DNA of 64,000 nt, taken from NCBI RefSeq assembly GCF_030028105.1, contig NC_092383.1, forward strand, positions 86,819,921 through 86,883,920, read 5' to 3'. This stretch comes from Mobula birostris. Lineage: Eukaryota. Positions 273 to 47,083 of this stretch are shown one piece after another. Under the pieces are notes generated by a model. It saw only the letters and a program-made list of their open reading frames with translations. It ran no database searches and was not told where the DNA came from. The translations under genes and the position numbers were made by a program. Every line of letters begins with the position of its first letter. Within the stretch, counting starts at the first letter, position 1.

Positions 273-291
273 TGATTCTATACCACCCCAG

Positions 292-748
292 TGTGAGACA
301 ATAGAAGAATGGTGATATTAAATTGCACTTAATCAAGCCTTCAGGATAAAATCAGGGGAACCATTAAGTGGCCGTCTCCTGAATTAATACAGTATTAAAG
401 GCCTTTGTATAGTCACGGGGTCATTGCTCAACTTTGCAATAAAAGATATACATTTTGGGTGCCTGGTGCTTATGCTGAGAGGACCAGCCACAAGTCTATT
501 AAAATTCAGATATGCTGTTCATTTGGGATGTCCATCCATTATAAATATGCGATTCTGCAAAAGCTGCCAGTCTATTTTTAAAAATTAAAGTTAAGGGTTA
601 AGTAATAATAGCTATTAAATTGCATTTATTCACTGTTTGTTGTCTTTTTATTTACAAGGTATAAAGCATCACTGTACTGATGCTTGCAGAGAGCAGAAAT
701 AGACTCTCTCGATCTGCTGTGTTGAATAAAGTTCTTCTGTATCTCACA
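292..748. mobile_element. possible solo LTR
   Basis: Begins tgtgaga and ends tctcaca (7-bp inverted ends, TG..CA), with AATAAA near the 3' end (726-731). No target-site duplication found. Confidence 0.3.
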
Positions 749-924
749 TGTTCGGTGTTCATGTGGCTCAGTTCAGCACTCACAACAATCTCGTAGAGTT
801 ACAGAGCAATACAGCATGGATAAAGGCCTTTCGGCCCAGACTGTCCATGCTGACTGCAGTGCCCACCCCAGCTGCTCCCAGTTCAGGTAGGAGAAGTCTA
901 GTGAACACACACCAGTGCACAGTG

Positions 925-1660
925 AGGGATCAGCAGTGAAAAGGGTGAGCAGTTTCAAGTTCCTCAGTGCCAACATCTCTGAATATCTATCCTGGGCCCA
1001 ACATATTGATGCAATTACAATGGAGGCATAATGGCGGCATATTTCATCGGAAGTTTGAGGAGACTTGGTATGTCGTCAGTGATACTCACAGATTTCAACA
1101 GATGTACGGTGGAGAGCATTCTAACTGAATCCATCATTGTCTGGCATGGAGGGGTAATTGTACAGTAAAATCTGCAGAAAGTTTAAACTCAGCCAATTCC
1201 ATCGTGGGCACTATCTTCCCACAATCAAAGACACTTTCAAAAGGTAATGCCTCAAAAAGACAGTATACATCATTGAGGACCCTCTTTACATAGGGCATGC
1301 CCTCTCCTCATTGCTACCATCAAGGAGAATGTACTCAAGCCTTAAATCAAACACTCATTGTTTCAGGAACAGCTTCAAACCCTCAACCAGCAGATTGGTG
1401 AATGGACAGTGAACCCATGAACACTATAACACTACTTTTTCCTCCTTTATGCATTTAATTTAATTATTTTTCACACTTTCACAATACTTTCTGTAAATTT
1501 CAGTGTTTTAATAATTAATACACTGAAACTTGCAATAGGTATATATATATATATATAGTAATTTACAGTGTTTTATTATTATGTCTATCAATGAAACTCT
1601 GATGTGACCCATCAAATTTCACGACATAGGGCAGTGATATTAAACCGGATTCTGATTCTC
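925..1660 (+). mobile_element. Rex1/Babar-like (L2-related) LINE 3' fragment
   Basis: Degenerate RT C-terminal motifs (YRCTVESILT-like) and a gattct-repeat tail. Same family recurs at 30920-31870, 13300-13740, 22250-22510 and 46787-47073. Confidence 0.65.
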
Positions 1661-3329
1661 ATTTCCTGCATTCAGCCCACATCTCTCTGAGCCCTGCCAC
1701 TTCATGTACCTATCCATGTGCTTCTTAAATGGGTACGTTTGTACCTGCCTTATCACTTCCTCTGGAAGACTCTGCAACTCAAACTTCTGCTGCCTTGCAG
1801 TAATACCCACTCATGGGTAAGGCTTGGGGAGTATCTGGAGCTGGAGTCCCTATTCCAGTCCGACATTGAGTTCAATGCTGAATGGCAACTCCTGTGATGC
1901 TGCTGGTGCCAAACTGTATTTATATCTGCCATTCCTTTGGAATCATTGGCTGTGTGAAGAAGGCGAGCCTGCTACATGGGCAACAGCTTACACTCTATAT
2001 TGTACTGGCTTGCTTATCATGTAGACTGCTGGGACACAGCATACAAGGTCAACCGTGACCAACAGAGCACCACTTATTATTTTTTTTTTTAATTTCTCAG
2101 CTCAAGCTGGTAAAATTTGAGGTACGGGCATAGCCAAGCACACACATTTCTTAATTGCTATGAACTTTCCGACTGTTCTAGTGGTGTTTGGTATTGTGGA
2201 TTTCTGAAGACTTACATAGATACTAGACAATGGGGTGACCTATTGGGGCACCCTTTGAGAGAAGAGTAGTGCAATCTGATGTGACCAGAATGAACATTTT
2301 AAATTTTCCTCAATGCTATTGGTATCACTTTGCTTTGGAAACTGAAGTAGAAAACCTCAGTTTATTAAAGAAGAATGACATGTAGCAAAGCAAATATAGC
2401 TCCTCCTCATTTAATGAAGGACACTTTTGATGGCATCATTTCTGGTTTATCTGCTACCCTTGTGCCTCTCATTGTCATTCTGAAAATGTGCAGTCCTTTC
2501 ATCCCCCATCTCTTCATCCTTCATCCTTCATCTCACTGATCTCTGATCTTGGAGACATTCATGCCTCTCCTCCTCTGTCTCTTCTTCTCTCATCTTTTTT
2601 TGTCCTGACTCTATGATCCTGGAGTCTTGTGGCCCTGGCCTCATCCGATTCTTGTTCTCTCCATCTCCTTACCAGTTCCCAACGACGTTTGGCGTCATCT
2701 CTTGATTATAATGTCCCCCTTCCCTTTCCACGCGGCATAATTAGGCTGACCATTTTTTTTTTACCCTAATGCTGGATAGAAGATATGAAGCAGTAACACC
2801 AAAGGATGCTGATTATTCTTGATGTGGTTGGCACTTCCCTAAATGGATGTGATATAGTCACCGCTGTCCTTTGACTGCAGCAAAGGGTTTTATGGGTATC
2901 TTGAAGTACGTCATTACAATAAGATTTAATTATCCCTTATTGATGGGTGGCAGTTAGATTTGTCCCAATCCTGCACATGCTGATGGTGATTAGCAGAATG
3001 TGACCCCTCGAAATAGAGCTGCCCTGCCATTTTGATCCAGTAGGTGTCGCTGCTGAGGCTGGCTGTGTGCATGCATTGGGCTGTCACGTCCCGATTTCCA
3101 TGATGATGGATCAGCTCTTGGGTGAATGCGAGCCTGTTGATTTGGAGAATGAGCAATTTTATACAAATATATAACCCTGAACTTTGCCTACATTCTGTAA
3201 CTTAGCGCATTTTAATTCGATTTAGCCAAAAGAAGTGCCACTGTAATACACCGTTTGCCCTAATTGGAGGTCACAAACAGACAAACAGACAGACAGAGCT
3301 TGAGAGTTTTAGTAGTACATAGATTACCG

Positions 3330-3833
3330 TGCAACCCTAATTGTTTAATGCTATTGTGCAGTGCCTTTGGGATGATACTAGTTGTAGATTTTACTATCAG
3401 GCAATGTATACCCTGTTCATGTTCCAAAGTCTTTCAATTTCCTCTTTTAATTCAGCATGTTCCTGCTGTTTTTCATTTATTGATTTCTGTAAGTTAGGTG
3501 GGTTTGGAATAGCTTTATCTACTACATGAGTTGTTCTTACTTAATTATTGTGTATTATTATTTCTGGACATTATTATAGATTGTCCTATCTGTAATAACT
3601 GATGAGTCGTAATATAATTTGTGGTATTGTGACTCTAAAATTGGATCAGGCTTGGATTTATAGTAAAGTGTGATTTCATTTCTGAGTTTGTATTTTAAAG
3701 CAAGATTTTGATGAATGATGTTTGCCACTTGATTGAGCCTGCGTAAGTAATCAGATTGTGTTAAACCGCTACAGGATCCCCTTAATGCGTTGGATTGTTT
3801 CTGTTCTTTCTTGTCATGATCTATATTTATCAT
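3330..3833 (-). mobile_element. R4/Dong-like non-LTR retrotransposon fragment (restriction-like endonuclease region)
   Basis: ORF 3558-3833 CSGLTQSDYLRRLNQVANIIHQNLALKYKL..KLYYDSSVITDRTIYNN continues downstream as a degenerate ..AIPNPPNLQKSINEK..LKEEIERLWNMNRVY, as in PD-(D/E)xK endonucleases of R4/Dong elements. Confidence 0.65.
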
Positions 3834-4619
3834 CTTGAATTTGTTGGTCTTTTATTATGTATTTTTGGTATGTTTATATTATTATTATTATTTCTACTTT
3901 TCTTTTCGTATTTGTATGTTGGTTCTTTGTCCATTTCTGTTGTGTGTGGTTTTTCACTGATTCTATTGTGATTCATTCTATTAACCCACAGGAAAATGAA
4001 TCTCAGGGTTATATGTGGTGACATGTATGTATTTTGATAATCAAATTACTTTGAACTATCCATACACTCACTACCCTCTGTATCAAAAAGTTGACCATCG
4101 GGTCTCTTTTAAATCTGCCCCTTCTCACCCTAAGTCTATGGCCTTATTTTTGGAGTCCCCTACCCTGGGGTGAAATAAAACTGTTACCATCTACCTTATC
4201 TATGTCTCCCATAATCTTAAACACTTCTATAAGGTCATTCTTCATTTTCCTGCATTCCAAGGAATAATGATCTAACCTGGCCAACCTCTCACTATAACTC
4301 ATTGCCCTCTTGTCCTGACAACATCCTTGTAAAACTTCTCTGCACTATTTTGGTTTAACCATATCTTTCATCTAGCAGGGTGACGAAAACTATACAAAGT
4401 ACTCAACAACAAATTATGCAACTGCAGCATAATATCCCAATTCCTGTACTTGGTGTCCAGACTGATGAAGGCCAGTGTGCTGAATGTTTATTTCACACCA
4501 CCTTTGCAGAGTTTTCAGTGAACTATGCACTTGTACTCCTGGGTTATTCTGTCGCATTATGCACCCTAACACCAAATCATTATAAATCAGATGGTGGCTT
4601 GACATCCAAAATGCATCTT

Positions 4620-5220
4620 TTTTTAACAAAACTATAAAAGTTTATTTACAACACAGAGGTACAGACAATCAATATCTAGTCATAGTCACAGTCATACTTT
4701 ATTAATCCCGGGGGAAATTTACAACACAGTAAGTATACTGAAGTTAAAATATGGTTACTACAATATATAAAAACAGTCAATACCATGGTGGGGTCCACCG
4801 TTTATGGAAGTCCTCCGATGTGCCCGCTGCGACAGCCGGACGTGAACGTATCCTCAGGGAAAAGGGCAGGCAGTCGGCCCGGGCAGCACTCTCCACCTTC
4901 CGCCACCTAGACCCATGAATGGCCATCTTGGCCAGGATCAGGAACAAGCCCACCAGGAGGTCCAGCAACCAAGGCAAGTCCAGTCAGCAGACGAAGGCAG
5001 GGAAGTGAAAGGTGTGCAGGAGCAGCCTGTATAAGAAGCACTTCAGCACGTCCTGGAATGGCATGGAAGGCATCCCCATGAGATGGCCAACAACCGCACT
5101 TATATTTATTGAAATCCATTTGCCACTCCTAAGTGCACCTCCCTAACTGATCAAGAAACTCCTGTAATCTATAGCAACCTTCTCCAGTATCAGTAACATC
5201 TCTTAATGTTGCGCCCTCCG
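4620..5220 (-). mobile_element. Tx1/L1-like ORF2 3' fragment
   Basis: ORF 4777-4977 LLVGLFLILAKMAIHGSRWRKVESAARADCLPF resembles Tx1 ORF2 C-termini; aataaa and an A-rich end near 4620-4650 on the minus strand. Confidence 0.55.
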
Positions 5221-5919
5221 GAGACTTACTTGTGCGTTTGCATCGGAACGATTGATAAAAAATAAATAAGGAATAACAAGAGCCGAGACACTGATACTTG
5301 TGGCATGACAGGAGTCACCAACCTCCATTCCGAGAAACAGCCTTCAAGCACCAACTTTTGCTTCCTACCTCAAGTCAATGTTGATTCCTCCTAGCTATCT
5401 CTCCATGGATTCCTGATTAACCTCCATTATGGGGCCTTCTTGAAGTCAAATTAGACTACATCCAAGGCTCTAAAAATTTGGCCAGGCATCACTTTCCCTG
5501 GGAAAGTGATCGTGTGGTTTACTCTTTCTGTGCCCCCCACGGCTTTATGCCTCTCCATAAGATCAGTAGACATCTACAAGGTCACTGAAGCAAAGAATAT
5601 TTCACCTAAACCCACAGCTTTGCTCCTTCTTCAGCAACAAGTTTCCCAAATGTGTTTGTTTGAATTCTTATTAAGGCAGGTCCAGAACAAGTGTAAGTCA
5701 ATAACTCCGCAAAGTTTAGAACAGAGAGAGATGGTAAAGTAGGTGGTGAAGAGAGCTTATGGCATTGGGCCAGCATTGAGCAGTCAAGAATTCATGATGC
5801 AAGTGTATAAAAACATAGTTAGGGCACATTCGTGGTTGGTGTGTAGATGTGTTTCCTGCATCACAGGAAGGATGTGGAAATATTGGAGAGATTGTAGAGG
5901 AGGTTAACCAGATTGTTTC

Positions 5920-8725
5920 ATAGAAACATAGAAACATAGAAAATAGGTGCAGGAGTAGGCCATTCGGCCCTTCAAGCCTGCACCGCCATTTATTATGATC
6001 ATGGCTGATCATCCAACTCAGAACCCCGCCCCGGCCTTCCCTCCGTACCCCCTGACCCCCATAGCCACAGGGGCCATATCTAACTCCCTCTTAAATATAG
6101 CCAATGAACTGGTCTCAACTGTTTCCTGTGGCAGAGAATTCCACAGATTCACCACTATCTGTGTGAAGAAGTTTTTCCTAATCTCGGTCCTAAAAGGCTT
6201 CCCCTCTATCCTCAAACTGTGGCCCCTCGTTCTGGACTTCCCCAACATCGGGAACAATCTTCCTGCATCTAGCCTGTCCAATCCCTTTAGGATCTAGTAC
6301 GTTTCAATCAGATCCCCCCTCAATCTTCTAAATTCCAACGAGTACAAGCCCAGTTCATCCAGTCTTTCTTCATATGAAAGTCCTGCCATCCCAGCAATCA
6401 ATCTGGTGAACCTTCTTTGTACTCCCTCTATGGCAAGGATGTCTTTCCTCAGATTATGGGACCAAAACTGCACACAATACTGCAGGTGTGGTCTCACCAA
6501 GGCCTTGTACAACTGCAGTAGTACCTCCCTGCTCCTGTACTCGAATCCTCTCGCTATAAATGCCAGCATACCATTCGTCTTTTTCACCGCCTGCTGTACC
6601 TGCATGCCCACTTTCAATGACTGGTGTATAATGACACCCAGGTCTCATTGCACCTCCCCTTTTCCTAATCGGCCACCATTCAGATAATAATCTGTTTTCC
6701 TATTTTTGCCACCAAAGTGGATAACTTCACATTTATCCACATTAAGTTGCATCTGCCATGAATTTGCCCACTCACCCAACCTATCCAAGTCACCCTGCAT
6801 CCTCTTTGCATCCTCCTCACAGCTAACACTGCCACCCAGCTTCGTGTCATCCGCAAACTTGGAGATGCTGCATTTAATTCCCTTATCCAAGTCATTAATA
6901 TATATTGTAAACAACTGGGGTCCCAGCACTGAGCCTTGCGGTACCCCACTAATCACCGCCTGCCATTCTGAAAAGGTCCCGTTTATTCCCACTCTTTGCT
7001 TCCTGTCTGCTAACCAATTCTCCACCCACACCAATACCTTACCCCCAATACCGTGTGCTTTAAGTTTGCACACTAATCTCCTGTGTGAGACCTTGTCAAA
7101 AGCCTTTTGAAAATCCAAATATACCACATCCACTGGTTCTCCCCTATCCACTCTACTAGTTACATCCTCAAAAAATTCTATGAGATTCGTCAGACATGAT
7201 TTTCCTTTCACAAATCCATGCTGACTTTGTCCGATCATTTCACCGCTTTCCAAATGTGCTGTTATCACATCCTTGATGACTGACTCCAGCAGTTTCCCCA
7301 CCACCGACTTTGGGCTAACCGGTCTATAATTCCCCGGTTTCTCTCTCCTTCCTTTTTTAAAAAGTGGAGTTACATTAGCCACCCTCCAATCCTCAGGAAC
7401 TAGTCCAGAATCTAACGAGTTTTGAAAAATTATCACTAATGCATTCACTATTTCTTGGGCTACTTCCTTAAGCACTCTAGGATGCAGACCATCTGGCCCT
7501 GGGGATTTATCTGCCTTCAATCCCTTCAATTTACCTAACACCACTTCCCTACTAACATGTATTTCGCTCAGTTCCTCCATCTCACTGGACCCTCTGTCTC
7601 CTACTATTTCTGGAAGATTATTTATGTCCTCCTTAGTGAAGACAGAACCAAAGTAATTATTCAATTGGTCTGCCATGTCCTTGCTCCCCATAATCAATTC
7701 ACCTGTTTCTGTCTGCAGGGGACCTACATTTGTCTTTACCAGTCTTTTCCTTTTTACATATCTATAAAAGCTTTTACAGTCCGTTTTTATGTTCCCTGCC
7801 AGTTTTCTCTCATAATCTTTTTTCCCCTTCCTAATTAAGCCCTTTGTCCTCCTCTGCTGAACTCTGAATTTCTCCCAGTCCTCAGGTGAGCCACTTTCTC
7901 TGGCTAATTTGTATGCTTCTCTTTGGAATTGATACTATCCCTAATTTCTCTTGTCAGCCACGGGTGCACTACCTTCCTTGATTTATTCTTTTGCCAAACT
8001 GGGATGAACAATTGTTGTAGTTCATCCATGCAACCTTTAAATGCTTGCCATTGCATATCCACCGTCAATCCTTTAAGTGTCATTTGCCAGTCTATCTTAG
8101 CTAATTCATGTCTCATACCTTCAAAGTTACTCCTCTTTAAGTTCAGAACCTTTGTTTCTGAATTAACTATGTCACTCTCCATCTTAATGAAGAATTCCAC
8201 CATATTATGGTCACTCTTACCCAAGGGGCCTCTCACGACAAGATTGCTAATTAACCCTTCCTCATTGCTCAAAACCCAGTCCAGAATAGCCTGCTCTCTA
8301 GTTGGTTCCTCGACATGTTGGTTCAAAAAACCATCCCGCATACATTCCAAGAAATCCTCTTCCTCAGCACCTTTACCAATTTGGTTCACCCAATCTACAT
8401 GTAGATTGAAGTCACCCATTATAACTGCTGTTCCTTTATTGCACACATTTCTAATTTCCTGTTTAATACCAACTCTGACCTCACTACTACTGTTAGGTGG
8501 CCTGTACACAACTCCCACCAGCGTCATCTGCCCCTTAGTGTTACGCAGCTCTACCCATCTCGATTCCACATCTTCCCGGCTTATGTCCTTCCTTTCTATT
8601 GCGTTAATCTCTTCTTTAACCAGCAACGCCACCCCACCTCCCCTTCCTTCATGTCTATCCCTCCTGAATATTGAATATCCCTGAACGTTGAGCTCCCACC
8701 CCTGGTCACCCTGGAGCCATGTCTC
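5920..8725 (-). mobile_element. CR1 LINE, 5'-truncated, near-complete frameshifted ORF2 (AP endonuclease + RT)
   Basis: ORFs 7904-8632 (VGVVYRPP, GDFN, SDHN endonuclease motifs), 6645-7697 (RT, KFADD), 6294-6617 and 6018-6281. Tail is a catagaaa repeat; tgtttc occurs at both ends (5914-5919, 8726-8731). Confidence 0.95.
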
Positions 8726-9803
8726 TGTTTCCTGTATTAGAAGACCATAAGACCAAAAGACATAGAAGCAGAATTAGGCCTTTCTTCCCATAGAGTCTAC
8801 TCCACCATTCAAACATGGCTTATTTCTCTCTCTTCTCTTATTTTCCTGTCTTCTCTCCGAAACCTTTGACGCCCTTACTAATCAAACTCCACTTTAAATA
8901 GATCCAATGACTTGACCTCAAAACTGTTTCTATAGCAGTGTTTGAATACCTGTAGACACTAAAGATGTCAGAAACTAGAGGTCAGAGTTCACTCTTGGAG
9001 GAACTCAGTGGGTCAAACTGCATTTGTCAGGGGGAAGAAAAATGTCAATGGTTTGGGTCGAGACCCTGCATCAAGTGTGAGTGGAGAGGGAGAGAGTGTA
9101 AATAGGAGAGGAGGAGGTGTGAGACTGAATCTACTTAGTGGTGACAACTGAGGAGGGGTGAAGCACAGCAGGCAAATGGAATGGGGAGGAAATAGGGTGG
9201 AGTTTGGAGGTGGGTGAGAGATGGAAGCAGATAAGGAGAAAAGGGGAATAGTGTGGAACCAGGTGTGGGAAGACTATATCCAGCTGGAGAAATCTCCTGG
9301 AGGGTGTTAAGCAAGAACATCAGGTCTACCATTGCCGGAATCTGATTTCACTCTGCAGGGATCACTACGACAATTGACGTCATTGTCTTGAGATCAGAGA
9401 TTTCTGTCCTGAAAGGTCTTTCCGATCCAGATGGGATTTTGACAGTCTGGTAGCTGATCACTACCATTATCGATATGTGATTTTTTTATTGCAGAAATAA
9501 TTAATAAATTGTATTTAAACACTCAATGTAACCTTTCAGAAATTGCAATCACACCTGGATTTCTGGGCACTAAAGTGGCAACAACCACTGTTGCAGCACC
9601 TTCTAACTACACAGAGAAATACTTGACAGGTACAAAATATAAAATTTCCATCAGAACCAGAGGGCACAGTTACAGACGTCATGAGGGGTTTCTTTCTGCA
9701 GGTTATAAAATTGTATGTGAGGAGCAAGTCAGGACATTGGCCTCAAGTGACCCTACCAACCCCATCTCAACCCAAGAGTTCCCTGGAATCTGAGACAAAT
9801 AAA

Positions 9804-9806
<3 letters not shown>

Positions 9807-9860
<54 letters not shown>
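9807..9860. repeat. (AC)27 microsatellite
   Basis: Read directly from the sequence. Confidence 0.95.
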
Positions 9861-9862
<2 letters not shown>

Positions 9863-10226
9863 GTCTGGAAGCCTCCCAAATGAAATATCTGGCATCGTTG
9901 TGTACTTTTGAAAGGCTGATCGTAATCTGAGGTAACTGAAAGCTCAACACTGCTGCTCTCCCTCAGTACTGCACTGGAAGATCAGCCCTGGGTTTCTGCT
10001 CAGGACTCTGGTGTGGGAAGTGAACCCACAATGTACTGACACAGGGGAGAGAGCACTGACACAGTAACAGCACTGACTGCACTTCACACCAAAATCATTG
10101 GCTGGGGTGTCATGGTCAACATGCTGGACGTGACCTGGACCTGATTTTACTGTCAAGTTCAAAAATATTTTTTACATTAATTTGTTCCTTTCCCCTCAAA
10201 TCTGAAAATGCCCTCCTCAGTTTCAG

Positions 10227-10545
10227 TTATATTGTGGGCAGAAAATACATAAGAGGAGTTGTGGGAAGAGAGATCACAAACGAATGTCACTATGAAGCAA
10301 AGTACTACTCGTGCACAAAGTATTGGTGCCATGGATGGACTCAACAATGTTCAGTTTTAGTGGAAACAAATGGGCATCACAGATGGAGTGGACGAGTGTC
10401 AATCACAGATAACATGGAATGGAGAATATTTACTGTTACTATGGTGGATCTTCGCTCTGGAGATACAGGATGGTACAGCTGTGGAAGTATAACAACAGGT
10501 CCCAATTTGATGATTAATGTACAATTAATGTACAAGTGTCTGATG
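10227..10545 (+). pseudogene. Unit A V-type Ig exon, frameshifted
   Basis: Acceptor tttcag and donor gtagg match the B V1 exon. A 1-nt deletion gives TAA at 10250-10252, and there is a 5-nt insertion near 10520-10530 (319 nt versus 315 nt in intact copies). Confidence 0.9.
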
Positions 10546-10589
10546 GTAGGTTTCTCAGAGACTGATTTTGTACTTCCAACAAAATAAAT

Positions 10590-10885
10590 GTCTCAGTAGA
10601 GGAGGCCATGGACTGACATGTCGGAATAGGAATGGGAAGTAGAACTGAAATGGGTGGCCACTGGGAGATCCAGTCTTTTTCTGGTGGATGGAGCATAGGT
10701 GCTCAGTGAAACAGTCTCCTAATCTATGTCAGATCTCACCGACATACATGAGTTGACACCGGGAGCACTGGATATAGTAGATGACCCAGCAAACTCATAG
10801 GTGAAGTGTCACCTCAGCTGGTAGGACTGTTTGGGGCCCTGAATGGTTGTGAGGGAGGGGGTGTAGGGGCAGGTGTGGCACTTGC
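10590..10885 (-). mobile_element. Penelope-like GIY-YIG endonuclease fragment
   Basis: Reverse complement reads approximately KCHTCPYT..IQGPKQS..HFT....VIYYIQCSRCQLMYVGE..RLGDCF.EH. Confidence 0.7.
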
Positions 10886-11364
10886 TTGCAATTCTAATTT
10901 GTCTGCGTGATTTCATGTCCCTTCTCCCTTTCGCCATCAGTCACACGTCATTTATTATCTTTCACATCTATCCGCATGGATTCTATCACTGTCTTCCTTA
11001 CAGCAGTGTCCACTTCCTTCAATTGTATTTCTTTATCACTGTCGCACCTCTGCACTTCACTATTTCCTTCTCTTCCTTTCCAAAATTTATTTTCACTTTG
11101 CAATTTCTGATTTACAGTCTTCATTTTTGTGCAGTCATGTCCCAGTAATTAGGTCTGTAGCTGATGATCAGAGGTTATTTTATCTCTCTCTCAGTTGAAC
11201 ACTACTTTAGTCTCCTATTTGAACCCCCCCCCCACCCCGCCAGTTCAGCTGCTTTACCTCACTCCACTCCACTAAGATTACAGTGGAAATAGGAGGCAAA
11301 TGTTTCAAATGCAAAGCCACCTCATTTCCTCGCAATGATTCTATAACTCTTCCATTTTGCTCAG

Positions 11365-11455
11365 TTTCATGATATGGAAGGTGGGTCGTTGGCTGCTCTT
11401 CGCTCTCCTGATGATCAGCACGAGTTCAGTCGTGTGGTTCACAAGGGAAACTAAG
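11365..11455 (+). pseudogene. Unit A transmembrane exon
   Basis: Acceptor gctcag; encodes FMIWKVGRWLLFALLMISTSSVVWFTRETK; weak donor gtagac; paralog of 47431-47521. Confidence 0.8.
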
Positions 11456-11710
11456 GTAGACTTAAGGAAATCAGTGGAATCAAATATACTGATCATTTGA
11501 GGAAAAACTTTAAAATATATGAATCCTTTCTTATCCTGTAGTCAAATTCAATTTTATGCAGATGATATGGCTTGGCTTTGACATGGTCTCTTGTGTGTAG
11601 AATGAATGGAATACTTGCTTCAGACAGAATTCCATTGTGAGTGACCGTGTGAACTAAAGCAGAGATCCCATTGTTGAAGAATCTGATGGGTTGACCATTG
11701 CCTTTTGCAG

Positions 11711-11761
11711 AGACGTGATGAATCTGATCCTTTCAGTCTGGTGGTCCAGGAGGTAAAGTGA
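11711..11761 (+). pseudogene. Unit A cytoplasmic-tail exon
   Basis: Acceptor ttgcag; encodes RRDESDPFSLVVQEVK*; paralog of 47770-47817. Confidence 0.7.
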
Positions 11762-12059
11762 AGACTCCCAGATTACACTGACTGTTCTGGAATTTTGCAT
11801 CAAGATCAAATATTCATTCTTCTGCACACTTTGTGCAGAGAAAATTAACCTCTTGTCATTAAACTGTTGACTCCATGAAAATGAAAACCGACCAAGAGAT
11901 AATGTCGCCATCCTTCAAGTCAGTGACTTTGATTTTTGATTTCCTTCTCCAACATGTTACCCTCATCGGTGTCAGTATTACGACAGTTTTATCTCTGCAG
12001 ATGCCTCCTGATTCACTGAGTATTTCCATTATTGGCAAATTTCATTTCAGATAGTCACA

Positions 12060-13020
12060 TATTTATTGTTCAAGTTTAATTGTCATGAATACGCATGAAT
12101 ACAGCCAACAAAACAGCGTTACTCTGGGGCTAAGTTGCAAAACACAATACCACCAGTCACACACAGCACAAAACACTATAACACATATAAATGCAAGCTC
12201 ATTTCAGATATCAGTAAAATACAGTCACACAAGTCCCACGAAGGTTGCAAAAATCTGCAGTTGAACACAATACGGCTCGTCCGCTGCCGAGCGAACACTA
12301 GGGGACAGCACTGACTCCAGCTTGGGCGCCTTCCACAATGCCTCCAAGGGCGGCACCGAGTCTGACGATTCTCTCCCTGGCGGCTGTAAACAGGCGACAG
12401 CTTGGTGCCGAGTCCTTGCTATGACTGAAGCCACACAGTTTTATCGTCATCTGCCAATAACTCAGTGATTCGGACTTGCAGCATTCCACTTTATCTATGT
12501 CCAACAGAGTTTTGTGATATCAAGAAAAATGACTAAGACAATCACTGACTGCTAAACTTCGCGCACCTGACACAGGCAGCATCACGGTCCGCTCCAAGTA
12601 CGACTCCTTCAGTTTCTCCACCAACGAACAACTCGCTGATGGGGTAGACCCGGAGTACTTTAAGATCTTAATGTCCAGCAGGGTCTTATGACCCTGTAGC
12701 AGCCGCAGAGATCGAACGCGCCGCTATCTTATTTTGCTCTCCCATCTACTGCTACCAACCTAAAAGTTCCCACACCTCGCACTAATTTATAATAAATACT
12801 ATGTACAACAGGATAGTCAATATAACATGGAAATACAGTTGTGTCTATATGAATTAAGCAAACTGATGGCCTGGTGGAAGAATCTGTCCCGGAAACAGTT
12901 GGTCCTGGCTTTTATGCTAGGGTATCATTTCCCGGATGGTAGAAGCTGGAACAATTTGTGGTTGGGGTGACTTGGGTTCTCAATGATCCTTCGGGCCCTT
13001 TTTAAACATTTGTCTTTGTA
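12060..13020 (-). mobile_element. composite of a non-autonomous retroelement and a Rex1/Babar-like fragment
   Basis: Recurrent 3'-tail sequence (gttcaagtttaattgtc.. on plus) near 12065, and Rex-like RT antisense sequence at about 12830-13020. Confidence 0.45.
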
Positions 13021-21399: not shown

Positions 21400-21778
21400 T
21401 CCTCAGTTAACTTCTCACTGTGAAACTCAATGACTCATGATGGCTGACATTTTCACTCAAGCAAGAAAAAAGTCTTCTGGAACAACTTAGGGAGTCAGAG
21501 AACATCTACAGATGCAGAGTGGTCAACATTTTCAGATAAAGCCCCTGCTTCACAACACCTCCAGCAATTTATTTTTACTCCAGATAACATCTACTGTTGC
21601 CGGTGTCCAACAATTCAACTTTTCTCATCATTTCTATCAGTCATTGGGAACTGTTTTTTAAAAATGTAACTACAAACTTTTCATTTTGTCACATATCACA
21701 CTTCAGTTGGTTAACTGCAGTTCAAAATCGGATTTTCTGCTCCCTTCTTCCTTATTTTGATTTGACAGTTACTTCCCC
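21400..21778 (+). promoter_or_regulatory. Unit D promoter-region relic
   Basis: Aligns with the upstream regions of B (about 27680-28065) and C (about 60790-61150), e.g. gcagagtggtcaacattt. Confidence 0.7.
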
Positions 21779-21978
21779 AATGTCCACTCTCCTACTTACA
21801 CAGACTTTCCCCTCCAGTCAGATTCTCTGCAGGGTCTCGACCCAAACCGCTGTCAATTCCCTTCTCCCTGACAGATGCCAAGTTCCTCCAGGAATTTTCT
21901 CTGAACTGCAGTTTCCAATATCTTCGAACGCCAAACCAAAACTGATGATGAAAATGTCCCATGCTGGTTGTCACTCAC

Positions 21979-22016
21979 TGGGTAGGAAACTAAATTAGAA
22001 GAATTGAAATCCACAT
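21979..22016 (-). pseudogene. Unit D leader exon, inverted and frameshifted
   Basis: Reverse complement is ATGTGGATTTCAATTCTTCTAATTTAGTTTCCTACCCA|gtgagtgacaaccagc: MWISILLI then TAG from a 1-nt insertion. Homologous to the leaders at 28115 and 61194. Confidence 0.85.
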
Positions 22017-22509
22017 TGTTTTCTTTGCAGAGACCGGGCCAGCACTGGTCTGCTCACAGGGTTCTGAACGAGTTAGCAGAAGAGATTGTGGAGGAATTAG
22101 CAGTGATCTTTCAAGTAAGGCTTCAGAGGATTGGAAAATTACAAATGTCAATCAACACTTTAAGTAGGGAGGGAAACAAAAGCAGGAAATTATAGGCAAA
22201 TTAGCCTGACCTCAGTGGTTGGTAAGATGTTAGAATCTATTATTAAGACCTGGATAGGTGTTCATAAATGATGAGTGTTGTTTTAGCTCCTTGAAAATGT
22301 GCTCAACATTAAGGTGGGGTTTATCTGTGATGAATTGGGCTGTATCCACCACCTTTTGTAGGTTTTTCTGTTCAAGGTCATTGGTGTTTTCATACCATGC
22401 CATGATGCAACCAGTAAGAATGCTCTCCACAGTGCATCTATAGAACTTTGTCAAAGGTTTAGATGACATTTTGATCTTCGCAAACTTCCAAGAAAATGGA
22501 GGCAGAAAA

Positions 22510-23330: not shown

Positions 23331-23539
23331 GAAATAAGGCACTGCCATGCCTTCTTTGTAATGGCTGTTAAATGCTCGACCCAGAACAGATCCAAGGAAT
23401 TTAATGTTATTGACTCTTTCCACCTCTGATCCCCTGATGGGGACTTGCTCATGGACCTCTGGATACCTTCTCCTGTTCTTAATAATCAGCTGTTTGGTTT
23501 TGCTGATGTTGAGTGGGAGATAGTTGTTGTGACACCCTT

Positions 23540-26500
23540 AATTGAACCCAGTTTCAGTTCTGGGACACCATTTCAGATCTGTATTAAAAGTGGAAGACTG
23601 TCAGTTTAGAAAGCAGATATGGTCAGAGAAATGATGTGTCAGATAATAGACGATACATTTTAGTCCCAGGTTATGAAAACCTGACTTATGGACACTTCTA
23701 CATATGAACAAGCTTCTGTTATGTTACTTAATTCAAAATTCCAATGCATGTACACATGTTTACACATGATATGAAGATTGTCGGTGTTGTGGGTGGTACG
23801 GAAGGTTGTTGAACGTTACTACAGGATGTGGTGCTGGGTGAAGAAGTGGTAGATGGAGTTTAACACAGAAAAATGTGATGTGATGCACTTTGGATGATCA
23901 AACTTGAAGGCAGATTACAAAGTTAATGGTAGGATTCTGACCAATGTGGAGGAACAGATGGCTATTGGTCTCCAAGTCCGTAACGTTCTTCAAAGTTGCT
24001 GTGCAGGTTGAAAGTGTGGAAAAGAAGGTGTATGAGGTGTTGGAATTCACTGGTCAAGGGAATTCAATTCAAGAGCGGCAAGGTAATGTTATCGCTCTAC
24101 AGAACTCCGGTTACATCACACTTGGAGTATCGTGTTCAGTTCTGATTGCCTCATTATAGGAAGGTTATGGAAGCTTTAGGGAAGGTGCAGAAGAGGTTTA
24201 ACAAGATGCTGCTTGGATCAGAGAACATATATTATGAGGAAAAGTAAAAGTTGAGTGAGTCAGTGATCTTCTCTTTGGAGCAAAGGAAGGTGAGAGATAA
24301 CTTGATAGAGAGGTGTAGAAGGAGTGTATACGGCATAGACTGAGTGGACAGACAGCTCCTCTTTCTCATGGTGACAATGACCAATACCAGAGAATGTCCA
24401 TTAATGGTGAGTGGAGGGAAGATTAGGGGAGATGCAAGAGGTAGTGTTGTTTTTCATTGATTCTGTTGTATTTCTTTGTTCTACTTTGAATGCCTACAAG
24501 AAAATGAATCTCTGGGTAGCATATGGCGACGTAAATGTAATTTGATAATACATTTACCGTGTACATTTTGAACTTTGATCAGGTGCATGATTACTGACCT
24601 TTCAAAATGCATTTTGAAGAAATGGAGTGAGAAAGAGACACAAGCATGAACATTTCCAGTCACTGTACAAAGGTCCAAAAGGAGAACGAGCAATGGAAAT
24701 TAAAGTTGGGTGCTGAATAAAATGAGTGAGGGGCAAATTATTGCAACTTGCATTGGTCGTCAGGGTATGAATCTGCAAATAGAAGGTGTAACTTTTCTCA
24801 GTACTGATCTGTGACTGTGACCCAAGAACGTACAACAAAGGGACTTGAAAATGAGAGAAGGTGAACTGCATTATTATCTTATAATCAGGGTAGTTTATGG
24901 TGACATCGTACTGCACGTTGATAAATTTAATTTGAATTTTGAACTTTGAAATGCCCTACTCACCAGGAGGAATATCACAAAATATCTTTCACCTGCTATG
25001 TGAGGATGTGAAGCGGTAACACCAGATTCTGTTTGGAGCTCATGATCTCTTCAGTTCAGGGTTATCTGTTGGGTGTTGTTTAGCTGCAGATAACTCCAGA
25101 AGCAGTGGTCCCACTTGTGAATCTGGGCCTGTTAAACCTGAGCTTGTTAATCATCTGAGGGAAGGAACTTGCTTTTGTTTCTTTATTCTGCTGCAAAACA
25201 AGAAATTTTGCATCAGATGGCAGTGTAAATAAATTCGATTCTGATTCTGAATCAGGACATCATAAAGCAATTCTCAAAGAATGTGGTTAGAACTTTTGTG
25301 CCCTTTTACTTGACTTATAAAACTGAACTTAGGGAAGTTCCAATGGATGCCTCATGAAAATAAATTGTTCCATCCTCTTCCTGGACTGCTCCATCACATA
25401 AGACCACAAGACCAGAAGACCATAATACAAAAAGACATGGGAACAGAAGTAGGCCATTCAACCATTCACTCTGTTCCACCATTCAATACTGACAGCTTTA
25501 TTATTCCCCTCAACCACATTCGCATCGTAACCTTTGACAACCTTACCAATCAAAAACTACTTTAAGCTCTGTGTTAAACATACCCAATTACCTGGCCTCC
25601 ATAGCTGCCAGTGGCAGTGAATTCCACAGATTCATCACCACCTGGCTAAAAAATTCCTCTTCATCTCTCACCTAAAGGGACATCCTTGTATTCTGTGGCT
25701 ACACCCTCTGGTCTGAGACTCCCCCACTATTGGAAACATCCTCTCCACATACACTCCATTGGGGTTCCAGGCCCTTCACTATTCAAGAGGTTTCAATGAA
25801 ATTTCCCCATCATTCTGAACTCCAGCAAGTACAGGCCCAGAGCCATCAAAAAATTTTTATATGTTAACCCTTTCATTCTTGGGATAATTCTCATGAACCT
25901 CCTCTGGCCCCTCTCCAATTACAGCATATCCTTCAATGGATAAAGGACCCAAGTTTGTTCACTATTTTCCCAGTGTCATCTGACTAATACCTTATGAAGC
26001 GTCAGTTCTTGGATAACTTCTCAACAACGAATGAAAAAATGTTGTACAATCCCACCATTATGTACATGAGTGGGATTAGGTTTAAACACAGTGGCTAAAT
26101 GGCCTTTTCACTTTTCTTCACCAAATTATTATTGTTGTTCAGCGATCTAGTTGCCGAAACAAAAATGCTTCACTGAAGATGTTTTATATCTCTGCACTTG
26201 TTCTCAACAGCGTATTGAACCATACTACTACTACGTCAACCACTACGTAAGGAACCATAATTGTTGAGAAGTTTTCCAAGAAGTGACAGGACAATGCAGG
26301 AAGAGTCCAGAACATCTGTCAGTGTGTAGCATCCATTGGTACTTCTCATATTCTGTTTGTTAAGACAATTAAATAAAACAGAAGTCCTACCCACATCAAT
26401 GCTTACTTTTTGCATTTTAAAGTGTACAGTATATGTCTGACTGGGCAACAATAATTTCCTTTGCGATAAAAAAAGATTTATCTTCTCTTATCCTTTGCTG

Positions 26501-28060: not shown

Positions 28061-28111
28061 AGTTTTTTCTCAGAAGGACAGACAGATCCAGGCCGGGTCT
28101 CTGTGAATAAA

Positions 28112-42890: not shown

Positions 42891-45800
42891 TCTTATGGAG
42901 ATAGACAGAGTGCAGAACTGGTCTCTGAAGAGGCAGATGGAATTCTATCTGAAAAAGTGTGAAGCTATATGTTAGGTAAGATGAAATCTTAAAGCAAAGT
43001 ACAAGATTAATGGCAAGATGTTGGGGTCAAAAACCAAATATCTTTTGAAGTTGACACACAAGTTGATAGGATGGTGAAGTAGGCACCTGCTATGAGCCAC
43101 AAGGTAATGCTAGGGCTGTATGAAACTCTGGTTAGTCCACACTTGGAGTATAGTGTTTAGTACTGGTCACCTCATTATAAAAAGAATGCGGCAACTTTAG
43201 AGGTTTTAGAGGAGATTCAGCATGATGCTGCTAAATATATCAGGTATATTTAAGAGACTCTTAGATTAGCACATGGATGGTTGTGTGCTGTGTAGAAGGA
43301 AAGGTTAGATTGATCATGGAGTAGGTTTAAGGCTGTGACATCATGGGCTGAAGGGTCTGTACTGTGTTTTACTGTTCAATGTTGTATATAAAAGGGATAT
43401 AAGGGGCAGTATTTTTACACAGAGATTGGGGGGTTATCTGGAACAAATTACTGAATGAATTGGTAGAGGTGGATAACATAAAAATGACTTTAAAACATTT
43501 CTGGAAAAGAGATATGAACTTAATATTGGCAAGAGAGACGAGATGAGTTAAACAAACTCATCAGAGTGAATGAGTTGAGCTAAAGGGCCTGTTCCCATAC
43601 TGTATAACTGTCTGATGTTCAATGATGTTATTAGAACAGGAACACAAGAGATTCTGTAGATGCTGTAGACAAGATCAACGTTTACAAAATGCTGTAAGAA
43701 CTCAGCTGGTCAGGCAGCATCTATGCAAAGGAATAAACAGTCAAAGTTTCAGGCCAATACCCTTCATCAGAAAGATCTCGGCCTGAAATGTTAACTGTTT
43801 ATTCTTTACGTAGACGCTGTCTGAACTGTTGAATTCCTCCCGCATTTTACATTATACCAGGAGTTGTCTTTTCATTGAGAAAAGAAGCATTACCCTGTCG
43901 TATCAACAACTGAACTTGGTCCAATATCTCCACATACACTCAGTGCAGAGATGTATTCATCCCTCTGGTGAATGTTGCGACCCCAACAACAGATCTCCCA
44001 GAGCTGGTAGTTGTCATTTGCCTGGCTGGAACTTTCACTTCCAATTAAATAGAGTTTGTGATCCCAACGATCCAAGCCCCATAACTTCCCCAGGAACATG
44101 GGTGTTCGCATTTGCACAGGAAACAGAAATTACTCACCTCCATGTAACCAAGCAACCCTTTATTCAAGGAAAGAGTTTCCACCTGTCAACCATGTACTCT
44201 TGCTTGGCTGCATTTGCAAAGCACATGAGACTGAATTATCTTTCCTTGCCTCAACAGGAAGTGAATATTCATGTGAAACATTTACGACAGTATCAACTGT
44301 AAGGTAAACCTCTTGATCTAGTTCTGCTTAAGGGTACAATGTTCTTATTGCTGGCACTATGATTGGTCCTGTTCCCATATGAGAGATAATTAAGGGAGAA
44401 GTTACAGTTTTACTTGTACAGAATGCCTGTGAGAGTATTGTTTTCAGTTCTACAACCAGTGGTAAAACCAACACTCTCCTACATGTTTTAACCCCAAGAC
44501 TCCAAGATAAATAAATAAATCTCTCTAAATACTTTGTAATAACTTAGACTTCAAAGTTGATATTAGTTCATATTTTAGAAGTAAATAATTGTAGTGTTTA
44601 TTAATCATCCAAAGGGGAAAGCTTCAATGAACTTCATTTGCCTCATCAACACCCACAAAATACTGAAGGAATTCAACAGGCCAGGCAATATCTTCACTTG
44701 CCACATAATTGAAATTTTCCCACAACCAATGTAATAACTTTCAAGGACTCTTCAATTCATGTTCTCAATATTTATTATTTATTTATTATTTCTTTTTCAA
44801 ATTGCACAGTTTGTTGTCTTCTATACTCTGGTTGAATGCATTACTTGGGTAGTTTTTCATTAATTCTGTTCTGGTTATTAATCTATAGATATTTTAAGTG
44901 TGTCCACAATAAAAAAGAATCTCAATTGTGTATGCTGACATTTATGTCCTTTGACAATAAATCTACTTTGAACTTTAAGGCTCAGAGTTCATATCATGGT
45001 GTTGTGTAATAGGTGCTTGAAACAACCTTCCAACCAACTTTCTTATAAAATTGTATGACTGCGTACCTAACAGATTTGATCCAGTTTTAAAGCCAATATT
45101 GATTTGATTTATTTTTTTTTTACTATTTGCTGCTCTATATGGCATATATTTGATACATAGAGACTTTTCATTTCATTATTTCTGAGAGCATCTTCACTTT
45201 ACAGAATTATTTTACATGTGCTTAAGACATTTGCACAATTCTGTGCAACAAACCCTATCTTCCAGCACATGGCCCAAAGCCTTCTGTGGAGATCTGACTT
45301 AAGACCACATTCAGACACTTCACCAAACACTGACTGTGACTCTGTTTCCACCACTCTCTGGGTAAAAACAATCCATTCAAATCCCTTCTAAATCTATGTC
45401 ATCTAGTTTTATTCACCTCTGAGAATGGGGAAGTTTGCTGTCGCCTATCCAACCTGTACATCTCATAATTTTGCATCCCTCAGTCATATCCACTCTTAAC
45501 CTCATTCTCCACGGAAAGCAAGTCTAGTTTCTTATAATGTTTATTCTTAGGAAATTAGAATCATTTGCTGCACTCAAAGAGTAGCCATGCAGTGTTTTCC
45601 ATAACTACTCCTTCACTAACCTCATCCCATGGTGTGAGGATGAGTTTTGTTTGTTTGTCAAACCCTAGGATGCTTTTTCCGCTTGTAATATTCACTGATG
45701 TTTACTGACTCAAGGATTGCAGGTAGAGCAATAAGCAATAAGGTAGCAACTTGCAGAGTTGACCAATGTCTCAACAACAGTAATTGCAGGAAAAAAATGA

Positions 45801-47073: not shown

Positions 47074-47083
47074 TTCCTTACAG

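What the first reader, a model, noticed from the sequence alone, without database searches (positions are those of the whole stretch)
10546..11003. Unit A joins V1 directly to the stalk/TM region across a Penelope fragment
Seen: after the V exon, A matches B intron 2 for only about 45 bp. It then contains a Penelope endonuclease fragment (10590-10885) and resumes as sequence matching B about 46690-46786, just before the stalk acceptor. About 17 kb of B (C2a, V2, C2b) has no counterpart. Inference: with units B and C, three ectodomain architectures (V; V-C2; V-C2-V-C2) sit side by side, and both length-changing junctions hold transposon fragments. Symmetric phase-1 exons allow such module loss in frame.
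Basis: partly seen in the sequence, partly recalled or inferred. Interest (0 to 1): 0.7.

Follow-up and report, generated by a model that had tools for sequence, protein, structure and literature searches.

The report
Broken remnant of ray immune-receptor gene
Unit A is not a working one-domain receptor but a leaderless, frame-broken leftover of a four-domain ray immune-receptor gene; its 16.8-kb gap (four exons, the stalk exon included) is bridged by a 0.3-kb internal scrap of a Penelope-like retroelement, which is ordinary gene-family decay with a tidy repair-patch look.

Summary
The sequence observation largely holds. After A's V exon (10221-10545), 48 bp match the intron after B's V1. A ~300-bp minus-strand piece of a high-copy GIY-YIG (Penelope-like) repeat follows (10594-~10891). 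Homology then resumes with B at 46683/46705-46786 and runs on into the TM exon. About 16.8 kb of B has no counterpart.

One detail is wrong. B 46786 / A 11003 is not a stalk acceptor. B's real stalk exon is 44258-44303, inside the missing part.

- There is no leader exon upstream.
- The V exon carries a 1-nt deletion that gives a stop after 10 codons. A related species shares it. The exon also has a species-specific 5-nt insertion.
- The V exon ends in phase 1 and the TM exon starts in phase 2, so no V-to-TM splice is in frame.
- A's V exon changes at its intron rate, whereas B's is constrained.
- No A-specific RNA was seen.

A is therefore a pseudogene fragment, not a third architecture. The repeat piece is cut at both element ends and has no target duplication, tail or hammerhead. 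Either it was captured as a patch when the deletion was repaired, or it is what later deletions left of a larger copy. Transposon pieces do sit at both deletion junctions (A and C). This scan had already filed units B and C as MDIR-family genes.

The parts
8731..8924 (+). Truncated copy of a window-wide interspersed repeat that abuts A's 5' edge. Nothing upstream of it matches B's leader exon or promoter.
   Evidence: The joint to intron-1 homology lies at a ~14-nt microhomology.
8925..10220 (+). A's part of intron 1. It is homologous to B 28209-29514 and C 61301-63088 and starts 56 bp inside the intron. It holds a (CA)n run at about 9800-9860.
   Evidence: Identity is 79.5% to B and 80.8% to C.
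10221..10545 (+). V-set Ig exon of unit A, V1 type, 325 nt against 321 in B. A 1-nt deletion near 10243 makes the phase-1 reading stop at TAA after 10 codons. A net 5-nt insertion forms an 11-nt tandem duplication at 10513-10534.
   Evidence: Pfam V-set E 7.9e-7. Alignment with B V1 and V2. Exon lengths. Tandem duplication. Cross-species contigs.
10546..10593 (+). Intron stub of 48 bp, homologous to the start of the intron after B's V1 (B 29836-29883). The start of the intron after V2 is similar.
10594..10891 (-). Internal fragment of a Penelope-like element, covering the CxxC linker and the N-terminal half of the GIY-YIG nuclease. It has two stops and two frameshifts. It is cut at both ends relative to the family and has no target-site duplication, tail or hammerhead.
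   Evidence: In one search, depth is 1e4-7e5 and the loose-end consensus continues before 10594 and behind 10884.. There is no other copy in the window.
10892..10907 (.). About 16 nt of unassigned origin between the repeat piece and the first recognisable B homology.
   Evidence: and reading of the sequence.
10908..11364 (+). The 3' part of the intron before the TM exon, homologous to B 46683-46786 plus 47085-47430. It contains no exon. In the upstream extension of the TM exon that some paralogs use, A has an in-frame TGA at 11336-11338.
11365..11455 (+). Transmembrane exon (FMIWKVGRW...). The frame is open, it starts in phase 2 and ends in phase 0.
   Evidence: tblastn with P0029, P0037 and P0042 gives 68-75% identity. 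B's counterpart is 47431-47521.
11711..11752 (+). Small cytoplasmic exon (RRDESDPFSLVVQE), phase 0 to 0, with a GT donor.
   Evidence: B's counterpart is 47770-47808.
21443..22052 (.). Unit D 5' piece. The promoter-like stretch 21443-21775 is on the + strand. The leader exon 21868-22052 is inverted and has an in-frame TAG. The piece ends at B-coordinate ~28198, just where A begins (28209).
24618..24713 (+). Last cytoplasmic exon of the A/D unit, a paralog of B 53406-53498, within the unit's 3' part 23534-26873.
44258..44303 (+). For reference, B's true stalk exon (GSEYSCETFTTVSTVS), 46 nt, phase 1 to 2. It is absent from A.

Best explanation
Unit A is a non-functional remnant of an MDIR / CD300-pIgR-like receptor gene of the V1-C2a-V2-C2b-stalk-TM type, a paralog of units B and C.

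Shown:
- A keeps only part of intron 1, the V1-type exon, the TM exon and one small cytoplasmic exon.
- Its leader and promoter are not upstream. A decayed, inverted leader and the unit's last exon lie 10-13 kb downstream as 'unit D'.
- The V exon is frame-broken.
- The stalk exon that adapts phase 1 to phase 2 is gone together with C2a, V2 and C2b, so no V-to-TM message can be in frame.

Inferred:
- The 16.8-kb gap is a derived deletion.
- The ~300-bp piece that fills it is an internal scrap of a Penelope-like retroelement, not a normal insertion.
- Most likely (about 0.45) the scrap was captured as filler when a double-strand break was repaired, in the manner of endonuclease-independent LINE-1 'patches' that come with target deletions.
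- Otherwise (about 0.35) it is what two later deletions left of a conventional insertion.
- Either way the event hit, or made, a dead gene. It predates the split from a species that is ~4-5% diverged.
For: Leader:
- B's leader and promoter (27600-28260) find only D and C elsewhere in the window. In A the homology starts at 8925 = B 28209.

Frame:
- Relative to both B V1 and B V2, A lacks 1 nt near 10243 and has 5 extra nt near 10524-10530. The exon is 325 nt against 321.
- The phase-1 reading from the acceptor stops at TAA.

Exon model of B:
- tblastn with XP_062921369 (P0029) places the stalk exon at 44258-44303, 46 nt, phase 1 to 2.
- The same search shows the TM exon starting in phase 2.
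- No stalk-like exon of either known type (YSCE-type or AEQTTT-type) exists in A.

Constraint:
- Changes unique to A number 20 in the V exon against 68 in intron 1. Changes unique to B number 10 against 114. Fisher p = 0.0045.
- A deviates at 7 of 47 conserved V columns, against a family median of 2.

Direction of change:
- A, B and C are a near-trichotomy in intron 1, with K2P distances 0.245, 0.225 and 0.294.
- B has V2-C2b, and C has homology to B's C2a-V2 intron (35211-36167); an earlier follow-up of this scan reads C as having kept V2-C2b.
- V2 domains form an old clade with 100/100 support that includes other proteins. A's V lies outside it.

Repeat piece:
- Depth is 1e4-7e5.
- In other copies the sequence runs on before 10594. 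On the minus strand this continues the reading frame after ...GLLYC.
- It also runs on behind 10884.
- No direct repeat of 8 nt or more flanks it, and there is no hammerhead.
- There is no copy at the matching sites of B or anywhere else in the window.

Age:
- Contigs of organism B (run X8) bridge V exon to repeat (record 26) and repeat to right flank (record 27).
- They share the 1-nt deletion (record 24, no gaps) but lack the 5-nt insertion.

RNA:
- Every contig of the putative RNA run on A's V and TM exons differs by 5-9%. At diagnostic sites all the depth carries the other letter, so these contigs come from paralogs.

Precedent:
- Sen et al. 2007 (PMC1920257) describe insertions with 3' truncation, no TSD and no tail. 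Of 21 such cases, 18 came with target deletions, one of 14.5 kb.
Against: - The V exon still has an open 106-codon Ig frame with both canonical cysteines and the tryptophan.
- The TM and small cytoplasmic exons are open and keep their splice sites.
- dN/dS is about 1 for every V pair, including B's functional V1 against V2, so it cannot show decay.
- The RNA evidence is thin: three small runs, contigs only, and their RNA status is a guess.
- The pre-deletion state is inferred from paralogs, not from an orthologous empty site. A shorter ancestor (for example V-stalk-TM) is not excluded, and the true size of the deletion is unknown.
- The 48-bp left stub is also similar to the intron after V2, so it does not identify the intron uniquely.
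- One-step capture and multi-step trimming leave the same end product.
- Pfam support for GIY-YIG is below threshold (E 0.13 on a 21-aa piece, and nothing on the X-joined read).
Confidence: 0.78

Rival explanations
1. A is a working or recently working single-V receptor, made by in-frame loss of the C2a-V2-C2b module, with transposons promoting such module changes.
For: - B's Ig exons are symmetric phase 1.
- Single-V proteins with the same TM type exist in rays: P0037 of Mobula birostris (184 aa) and P0042 of Hemitrygon akajei (275 aa).
- Transposon pieces lie at both junctions.
- A's V, TM and small cytoplasmic exons have open frames.
Against: - There is no leader exon.
- There is a stop after 10 codons from the acceptor, and the V exon length is 325 nt.
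- The stalk exon is deleted and V to TM is out of frame.
- The functional single-V relatives all keep a stalk segment between V and TM.
- A's V exon evolves at its intron rate.
- No A-specific RNA was seen.
Confidence: 0.04
2. The short V-to-TM intron is ancestral, meaning A descends from a single-V gene, and the Penelope piece merely inserted into it.
For: - A's V groups weakly (83/87) with P0042, a single-V protein, and P0031 rather than with B V1 in the protein tree.
- The first ~45-70 bp after V exons are conserved between V1 and V2, so the left stub does not prove descent from B's intron 2.
Against: - The piece lacks the element's 3' end, tail, hammerhead and target duplication. Earlier notes of this scan describe normal insertions in this genome with 14-15-bp duplications.
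- The homology on both sides ends flush with the piece.
- Without a stalk exon the ancestral gene could not have been in frame.
- A is no outgroup to B and C in intron 1.
Confidence: 0.06
3. A multi-step history. A conventional Penelope insertion entered the long intron region of the A lineage after the A/B split. Two separate deletions, each with one breakpoint inside the element, then removed its ends together with the 16.8 kb.
For: - The locus is an old pseudogene with many other rearrangements: the A/D split, a truncated repeat at 8925, and C's deletion.
- The piece is old, with two stops, two frameshifts and mostly 90-95% identity to other copies.
- There is no microhomology at the left joint.
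Against: - It needs three events where one suffices.
- C's junction shows the same pattern of a short internal repeat piece bounded by both breakpoints. Under this model that again needs two deletions.
Confidence: 0.33
4. An assembly artefact. The junction is a mis-join through a high-copy repeat.
For: The piece is a very high-copy repeat, the kind of sequence in which assemblers collapse.
Against: - Independent contigs from another species (run X8, records 26 and 27) cross both edges of the piece into A's unique flanks.
- Record 26 has only 28 nt inside the repeat and record 27 only 25 nt, both under the tool's 31-nt bridging rule.
- The flanks on both sides are single-copy and collinear with B.
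Confidence: 0.03

Closest known systems
Modular domain immune-type receptors (MDIR) of skates, and the wider CD300 / pIgR / TREM-like IgSF group. From my own knowledge: Cannon et al. 2006, Immunogenetics. The family is mentioned in PMC3031540.
   Same: - The V-set domain has the CD300-type extra cysteine pair.
- V and C2 exons are symmetric phase 1, and the genes sit in tandem multigene clusters.
- The number of ectodomains varies between members. Proteins with one, two and more V stretches appear among the hits.
- The TM segment carries a charged residue.
   Different: A is not a member with fewer domains. It is a dead fragment: no leader, a frame-broken V exon, no stalk exon, and incompatible phases.
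Endonuclease-independent (non-classical) LINE-1 insertions at double-strand breaks (Sen et al. 2007, PMC1920257). Morrish et al. 2002 is cited from my own knowledge.
   Same: - It is an internal retroelement fragment truncated at the 3' end as well as the 5' end.
- It has no target-site duplication and no tail.
- It sits exactly where kilobases of target DNA are missing. In the paper, 18 of 21 cases came with deletions, one of 14.5 kb.
   Different: - The element here is a Penelope-like element, not L1.
- The pre-insertion state is known only from paralogs, not from an orthologous empty site.
- The element's cleavage-site preference could not be tested.
Canonical EN+ Penelope-like elements, Neptune-like (Craig et al. 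2021, PMC8557442; Frangieh et al. 2024, PMC11167929).
   Same: - A GIY...YVGE core with CxxC between the two motifs, and H residues after it (the CCHH pattern).
- A CxxC linker motif upstream.
- Very high copy number.
   Different: - Only about 97 codons of the nuclease region are present.
- There is no RT, no pseudo-LTR, no hammerhead and no tail.
- There is none of the fold-back or tandem structure typical of real insertions.
Processed decay of tandem immune-receptor arrays (KIR, LILR and CD300 pseudogenes and gene fragments). General knowledge.
   Same: Truncated, frame-shifted copies lie between intact paralogs, with breakpoints in interspersed repeats.
   Different: Nothing essential. This is the category the locus falls into.

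Membership tests
MDIR / CD300-pIgR-like receptor gene (as a functional member) | V-set Ig domain of the family type | tested here: met
   - Pfam V-set E 7.9e-7.
- 1783 relatives at E<=0.001, the nearest at 72% identity.
- A's V falls among V1-type domains.
MDIR / CD300-pIgR-like receptor gene (as a functional member) | Leader (signal peptide) exon upstream, in phase 1 | tested here: not met
   No match to B's or C's leader in 1-8925. The only other leader-like copy is inverted, downstream, and has a stop.
MDIR / CD300-pIgR-like receptor gene (as a functional member) | Open reading frame through the exon chain: leader to V, to stalk, to TM | tested here: not met
   - TAA after 10 codons from the acceptor.
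- The V exon is 325 nt.
- The stalk exon is absent.
- V ends in phase 1 and TM starts in phase 2.

MDIR / CD300-pIgR-like receptor gene (as a functional member) | Transcription | tested here: inconclusive
   Contigs of the one putative RNA run laid (X2) that cover A's exons are 5-9% different, so they come from paralogs. The runs are small and their RNA status is a guess.
Penelope-like element (EN+) | GIY-YIG nuclease with the CCHH pattern and, in Neptune or Nematis types, an upstream CX2-5CxxC linker | tested here: inconclusive
   - The motifs are visible in the translation and fit the description in PMC8557442.
- Pfam GIY-YIG gives only E 0.13 on the 21-aa piece, and nothing on the X-joined read.
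Penelope-like element (EN+) | Reverse transcriptase upstream of the nuclease | not testable with these tools
   The fragment holds no RT. No family consensus or fuller copy is available in the window.
Penelope-like element (EN+) | Dispersed high copy number | tested here: met
   Depth is 1e4-7e5 in runs of three further species and in the putative RNA run of the window's species, against ~10-300 in the flanks.
Penelope-like element (EN+) | Signature of a normal insertion: intact 3' end with tail and hammerhead, plus target-site duplication | tested here: not met
   - The family sequence continues past both ends of the piece.
- There is no Rfam hammerhead in 8000-13000.
- No flanking direct repeat of 8 nt or more.
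Endonuclease-independent retroelement patch (criteria of Sen et al. 2007) | 3' truncation, no TSD, no tail | tested here: met
   The criteria were read.
Endonuclease-independent retroelement patch (criteria of Sen et al. 2007) | Verified orthologous pre-insertion site showing that the insertion and the deletion are one event | not testable with these tools
   - Only paralogs (B, C) show the undeleted state.
- The one related species with readable contigs already has both junctions.
- Large genome records could not be fetched.
   The removed set includes the 46-nt stalk exon, which is phase 1 to 2. The TM exon is phase 2.

The most novel reading that the evidence does not exclude
The 0.3-kb Penelope piece is a one-step, endonuclease-independent capture of retroelement cDNA (or a template switch into a copy) during repair of a break. 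The same repair removed 16.8 kb and four exons. C's 5.9-kb deletion, which is filled by a 127-nt internal piece of another repeat, would be a second case in the same cluster. That would make repeat-patched break repair a recurrent way in which domain modules are lost in this receptor family, and the first such case described for a Penelope-like element.
Probability: 0.35. Interest if true: 0.4.

Novelty: new member of a known kind. Interest (0 to 1): 0.2.

Why it matters
The result corrects a tempting reading. The three units do not show three working ectodomain architectures side by side. A is a dead fragment, so it should not be counted as a single-V receptor in a census of this cluster.

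The family's variable domain number was already known. What remains of modest interest is mechanistic. Two independent module-removing deletions in one cluster (A and C) each carry a short internal repeat fragment at the junction. A cluster-wide or cross-species census could test this as a repair-patch signature.

Tried and rejected
Rejected: B's real stalk exon is 44258-44303. B 46787-47084 is an insert flanked by a direct repeat. A's phase-1 reading from 11004 hits TGA near 11107.
- An extended TM exon, as in P0016, using the upstream acceptor at A 11282. In the TM frame A has TGA at 11336-11338, and the phase-1 reading ends in a stop at the TM exon.
- An AEQTTT-type stalk mini-exon, as in the single-V proteins P0037 and P0007. 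None is in the window.
- A second Penelope copy in B that would allow recombination between two copies. None is in the window.
- dN/dS as a test of decay. It is about 1 for all V pairs and therefore uninformative.
- Pfam on the X-joined nuclease read gave no hit.
- The search for homologous proteins with A's V exon gave a blank. Given the length rule and the obvious relatives found, this means nothing.
- Fetching genomic loci of the single-V genes P0037 and P0042 to compare introns returned no DNA, because the files were too large.
- Hammerhead or other RNA families in 8000-13000: none found.
- RNA support for A. The runs listed hold 1-3% of the words, and the contigs laid come from paralogs.

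Full report
WHAT IS IN THE SEQUENCE

A self-comparison of the window shows that unit A (8925-11978) is collinear with two separate parts of unit B.
- A 8925-10593 matches B 28209-29883 at ~78-80%.
- A 10937-11978 matches B 46720-48033.

Local alignment places the left break at A 10593 / B 29883, 48 bp after the GT donor of the V exon. The right resumption is at A 10922 / B 46705, probably from about A 10908 / B 46683.

THE PIECE IN BETWEEN

On the minus strand, 10594-~10891 reads as follows, across two frame changes and two stops.
- First a ...CHTC... linker.
- Then VIYYIQCSRCQLMYVGE...RLGD.F.EH...
- Then LPVATHF...DMSVHGLLY.

This is the pattern that Craig et al. (PMC8557442) describe for the nuclease region of EN+ Penelope-like elements of the Neptune type: a CxxC linker, and a GIY-YIG core with a CCHH pattern. 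Pfam support is weak, with GIY-YIG at E 0.13 on the 21-residue piece and nothing on an X-joined read.

Laying contigs of four public runs on 9870-12300 shows that it is a dispersed repeat. Depth is 1e4-7e5 over 10594-10890, against roughly 10-300 in the flanks.

The same call gives the key anatomical fact. Hundreds of contigs from other copies run on beyond both ends of A's piece.
- Before 10594 their consensus continues the minus-strand reading frame after ...GLLYC.
- Behind 10884 it continues toward the linker.

A's piece is therefore an internal fragment, cut at the element's 3' side as well as its 5' side. It has no flanking direct repeat of 8 nt or more and no hammerhead or other Rfam match nearby. 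No other copy exists in the window, in particular not at the corresponding sites of B.

Normal Penelope insertions keep their 3' region and tail (PMC11167929). Earlier notes of this scan describe them in this genome with 14-15-bp target duplications (I did not test those notes).

B'S TRUE EXON CHAIN AND THE 'STALK'

A HMMER search with A's V exon returned, among 1783 relatives, XP_062921369 of Mobula hypostoma (P0029; named). tblastn of that protein on the window, plus a motif scan and the sequence itself, give B's exons:

| Exon | Coordinates | Length and phase |
|---|---|---|
| Leader | 28112-28153 | |
| V1 | 29515-29835 | 321 nt |
| C2a | 32570-32890 | 321 nt |
| V2 | 37870-38190 | 321 nt |
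| C2b | 39534-39845 | 312 nt |
| Stalk | 44258-44303 | 46 nt, phase 1 to 2 |
| TM | 47431-47521 | starts in phase 2 |
| Small cytoplasmic exon | 47770-47808 | |
| Last exon | 53406-53498 | |

B 46787-47084 is a 298-bp insert absent from A, flanked by a direct repeat that ends in TTCCTYACAG and so mimics an acceptor. The real stalk exon lies inside the part that A lacks.

WHY A CANNOT ENCODE A V-TM RECEPTOR

(i) There is no leader. B's promoter and leader find only C and D elsewhere in the window. A's homology starts 56 bp inside intron 1, directly after a truncated interspersed repeat.

(ii) The V exon (10221-10545) is 325 nt instead of 321.
- A 1-nt deletion near 10243 makes the reading from the phase-1 acceptor stop at TAA after 10 codons.
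- A net 5-nt insertion, now a perfect 11-nt tandem duplication at 10513-10534, shifts the 3' end.

(iii) Even with an intact V exon, phase 1 joined to the phase-2 TM exon gives a stop after two codons. With A's actual frame the TM exon is read out of frame to a stop.

(iv) Alternatives were checked.
- The longer TM exon used by P0016 has an in-frame TGA in A.
- No YSCE-type or AEQTTT-type stalk exon exists in A.
- The functional single-V relatives (P0037 of M. birostris, 184 aa; P0042 of Hemitrygon, 275 aa) all keep a stalk between V and TM.

SIGNS OF LONG NEUTRALITY

Changes were polarised with the third sequence. A has 20 unique changes in 267 nt of V exon and 68 in 989 aligned intron-1 columns. 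B has 10 and 114. The Fisher test gives p = 0.0045.
- A's exon changes about as fast as its intron.
- B's exon changes about a third as fast as its intron.

A deviates at 7 of 47 columns that are at least 85% conserved among 38 related V domains, where the median is 2. dN/dS is about 1 for all pairs, including B's own V1 against V2, and says nothing.

DIRECTION OF CHANGE

In intron 1, A, B and C are nearly equidistant, with K2P distances 0.245, 0.225 and 0.294. A has the shortest branch, so it is not an outgroup.
- B has V2-C2b. In C, homology to B resumes in the C2a-V2 intron (B 35211-36167); the earlier follow-up s1-145340 reads C as having lost only V1-C2a.
- In a tree of 56 V domains the V2 domains form a clade with 100/100 support that includes domains of other proteins. 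A's V lies outside it, among the V1-type domains.

The longer form is therefore older, and A's gap is a loss.

Two caveats apply. This rests on paralogs, not on an orthologous empty site. And the first ~45-70 bp after V exons are similar for V1 and V2, so the left stub does not identify the intron uniquely.

AGE AND REALITY OF THE JUNCTION

Contigs of run X8 come from organism B, which holds about 21% of the 31-mers and is thus about 4-5% diverged.
- Record 26 crosses from the V exon into the repeat (10460-10621).
- Record 27 crosses from the repeat into the right flank (10860-10969).
- Record 24 carries the 1-nt deletion (10182-10340, no gaps).
- Record 26 lacks the 5 nt at 10524-10530.

The deletion, the patch and the first frameshift therefore predate that species split, and the 5-nt insertion is younger. 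These contigs also argue against a mis-assembly, although records 26 and 27 have only 28 and 25 nt inside the repeat.

RNA

No listed run is on record as RNA. Contigs of the putative RNA run X2 that lie on A's V and TM exons differ from A by 5-9%. At diagnostic positions all the depth carries the other letter. They come from paralogs, so there is no evidence that A is transcribed. The data are thin.

HOW THE JUNCTION AROSE (INFERENCE)

The end product is an internal, doubly truncated retroelement fragment without target duplication, sitting flush between two sequences that lie 16.8 kb apart in the paralog. This matches the criteria that Sen et al. (PMC1920257) used for endonuclease-independent L1 insertions at double-strand breaks. 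Of their 21 cases, 18 came with target deletions, one of 14.5 kb.

The alternative is a conventional insertion trimmed later by two deletions. It needs three events but cannot be excluded in a locus this decayed.

C's 5.9-kb deletion junction (C 63088 | 63228, = B ~29335 | 35211) is likewise filled by a 127-nt internal piece of another repeat family. This favours capture at repair slightly. I put one-step capture at about 0.45, multi-step trimming at about 0.35, and the rest at about 0.2.

WIDER CONTEXT

A is only one of two complementary pieces.
- 'Unit D' holds a promoter-like stretch (21443-21775) and an inverted leader with an in-frame TAG (21868-22052).
- After a gap it also holds the unit's 3' part with the last exon (23534-26873; exon 24618-24713).
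- D's leader piece ends at B-coordinate ~28198, and A begins at 28209.

One ancestral unit therefore appears to have been broken in intron 1 and its parts permuted.

VERDICT

The idea of an in-frame, transposon-assisted route to a third working architecture is not supported for A. The family (MDIR / CD300-pIgR-like) and its variable domain number are already known (PMC3031540; Cannon et al. 2006 from my own knowledge). This is an ordinary pseudogene fragment with a tidy, possibly one-step, repeat-patched deletion.

Noticed in passing
window 21443-22052 and 23534-26873, against 8925-11978: Units A and D are complementary pieces of one unit. D's inverted leader piece ends at B-coordinate ~28198 and A starts at 28209. 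D also holds the last exon (24618-24713). The order is permuted, with A lying upstream of D's promoter. D's leader has an in-frame TAG.
   Followed up: partly
window 8731-8924: A's 5' edge is a truncated copy of a repeat family with at least seven other copies in the window, for example 25413-25933, 56327-56796 and 59416-59864. It is joined to intron 1 at a ~14-nt microhomology.
   Followed up: partly
window 63088-63228 and 63407-63647: C's 5.9-kb deletion junction (B ~29335 | 35211) is filled by a 127-nt internal piece of that same repeat family. A separate repeat copy at 63407-63647 looks like a later insertion.
   Followed up: partly
window 46787-47084: A 298-bp insert specific to B, flanked by a direct repeat ending TTCCTYACAG. 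Its left edge mimics a splice acceptor and misled the exon model.
   Followed up: partly
window 10513-10534: A perfect 11-nt tandem duplication (ATTAATGTACA twice) at the 3' end of A's V exon. The bridging contig of a related species lacks 5 of these bases, so the duplication is young.
   Followed up: yes
P0029 (XP_062921369, Mobula hypostoma isoform X3): This annotated isoform is V1-C2a-C2b-stalk-TM, with the V2 exon skipped in frame. Symmetric phase-1 exons are thus used for module skipping at the splicing level in this family.
   Followed up: no
window 47347-47430 and 11283-11364: The ~85 bp upstream of the TM exon are homologous to a coding extension of the TM exon in another family member (P0016). 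The frame is open in B and has one stop in A. B has a CAGAG tandem acceptor there that could in principle accept a phase-1 exon.
   Followed up: partly
window 12084-12247: Another very high-copy repeat (depth ~1.5e4), just beyond the end of A's homology with B.
   Followed up: no
window 11363-11848 (run X2, record 23): A 546-nt contig of the putative RNA run joins a TM exon to the small cytoplasmic exon and then reads on past its donor. It is 5-9% different from A, so it comes from a paralog whose message ends there.
   Followed up: no
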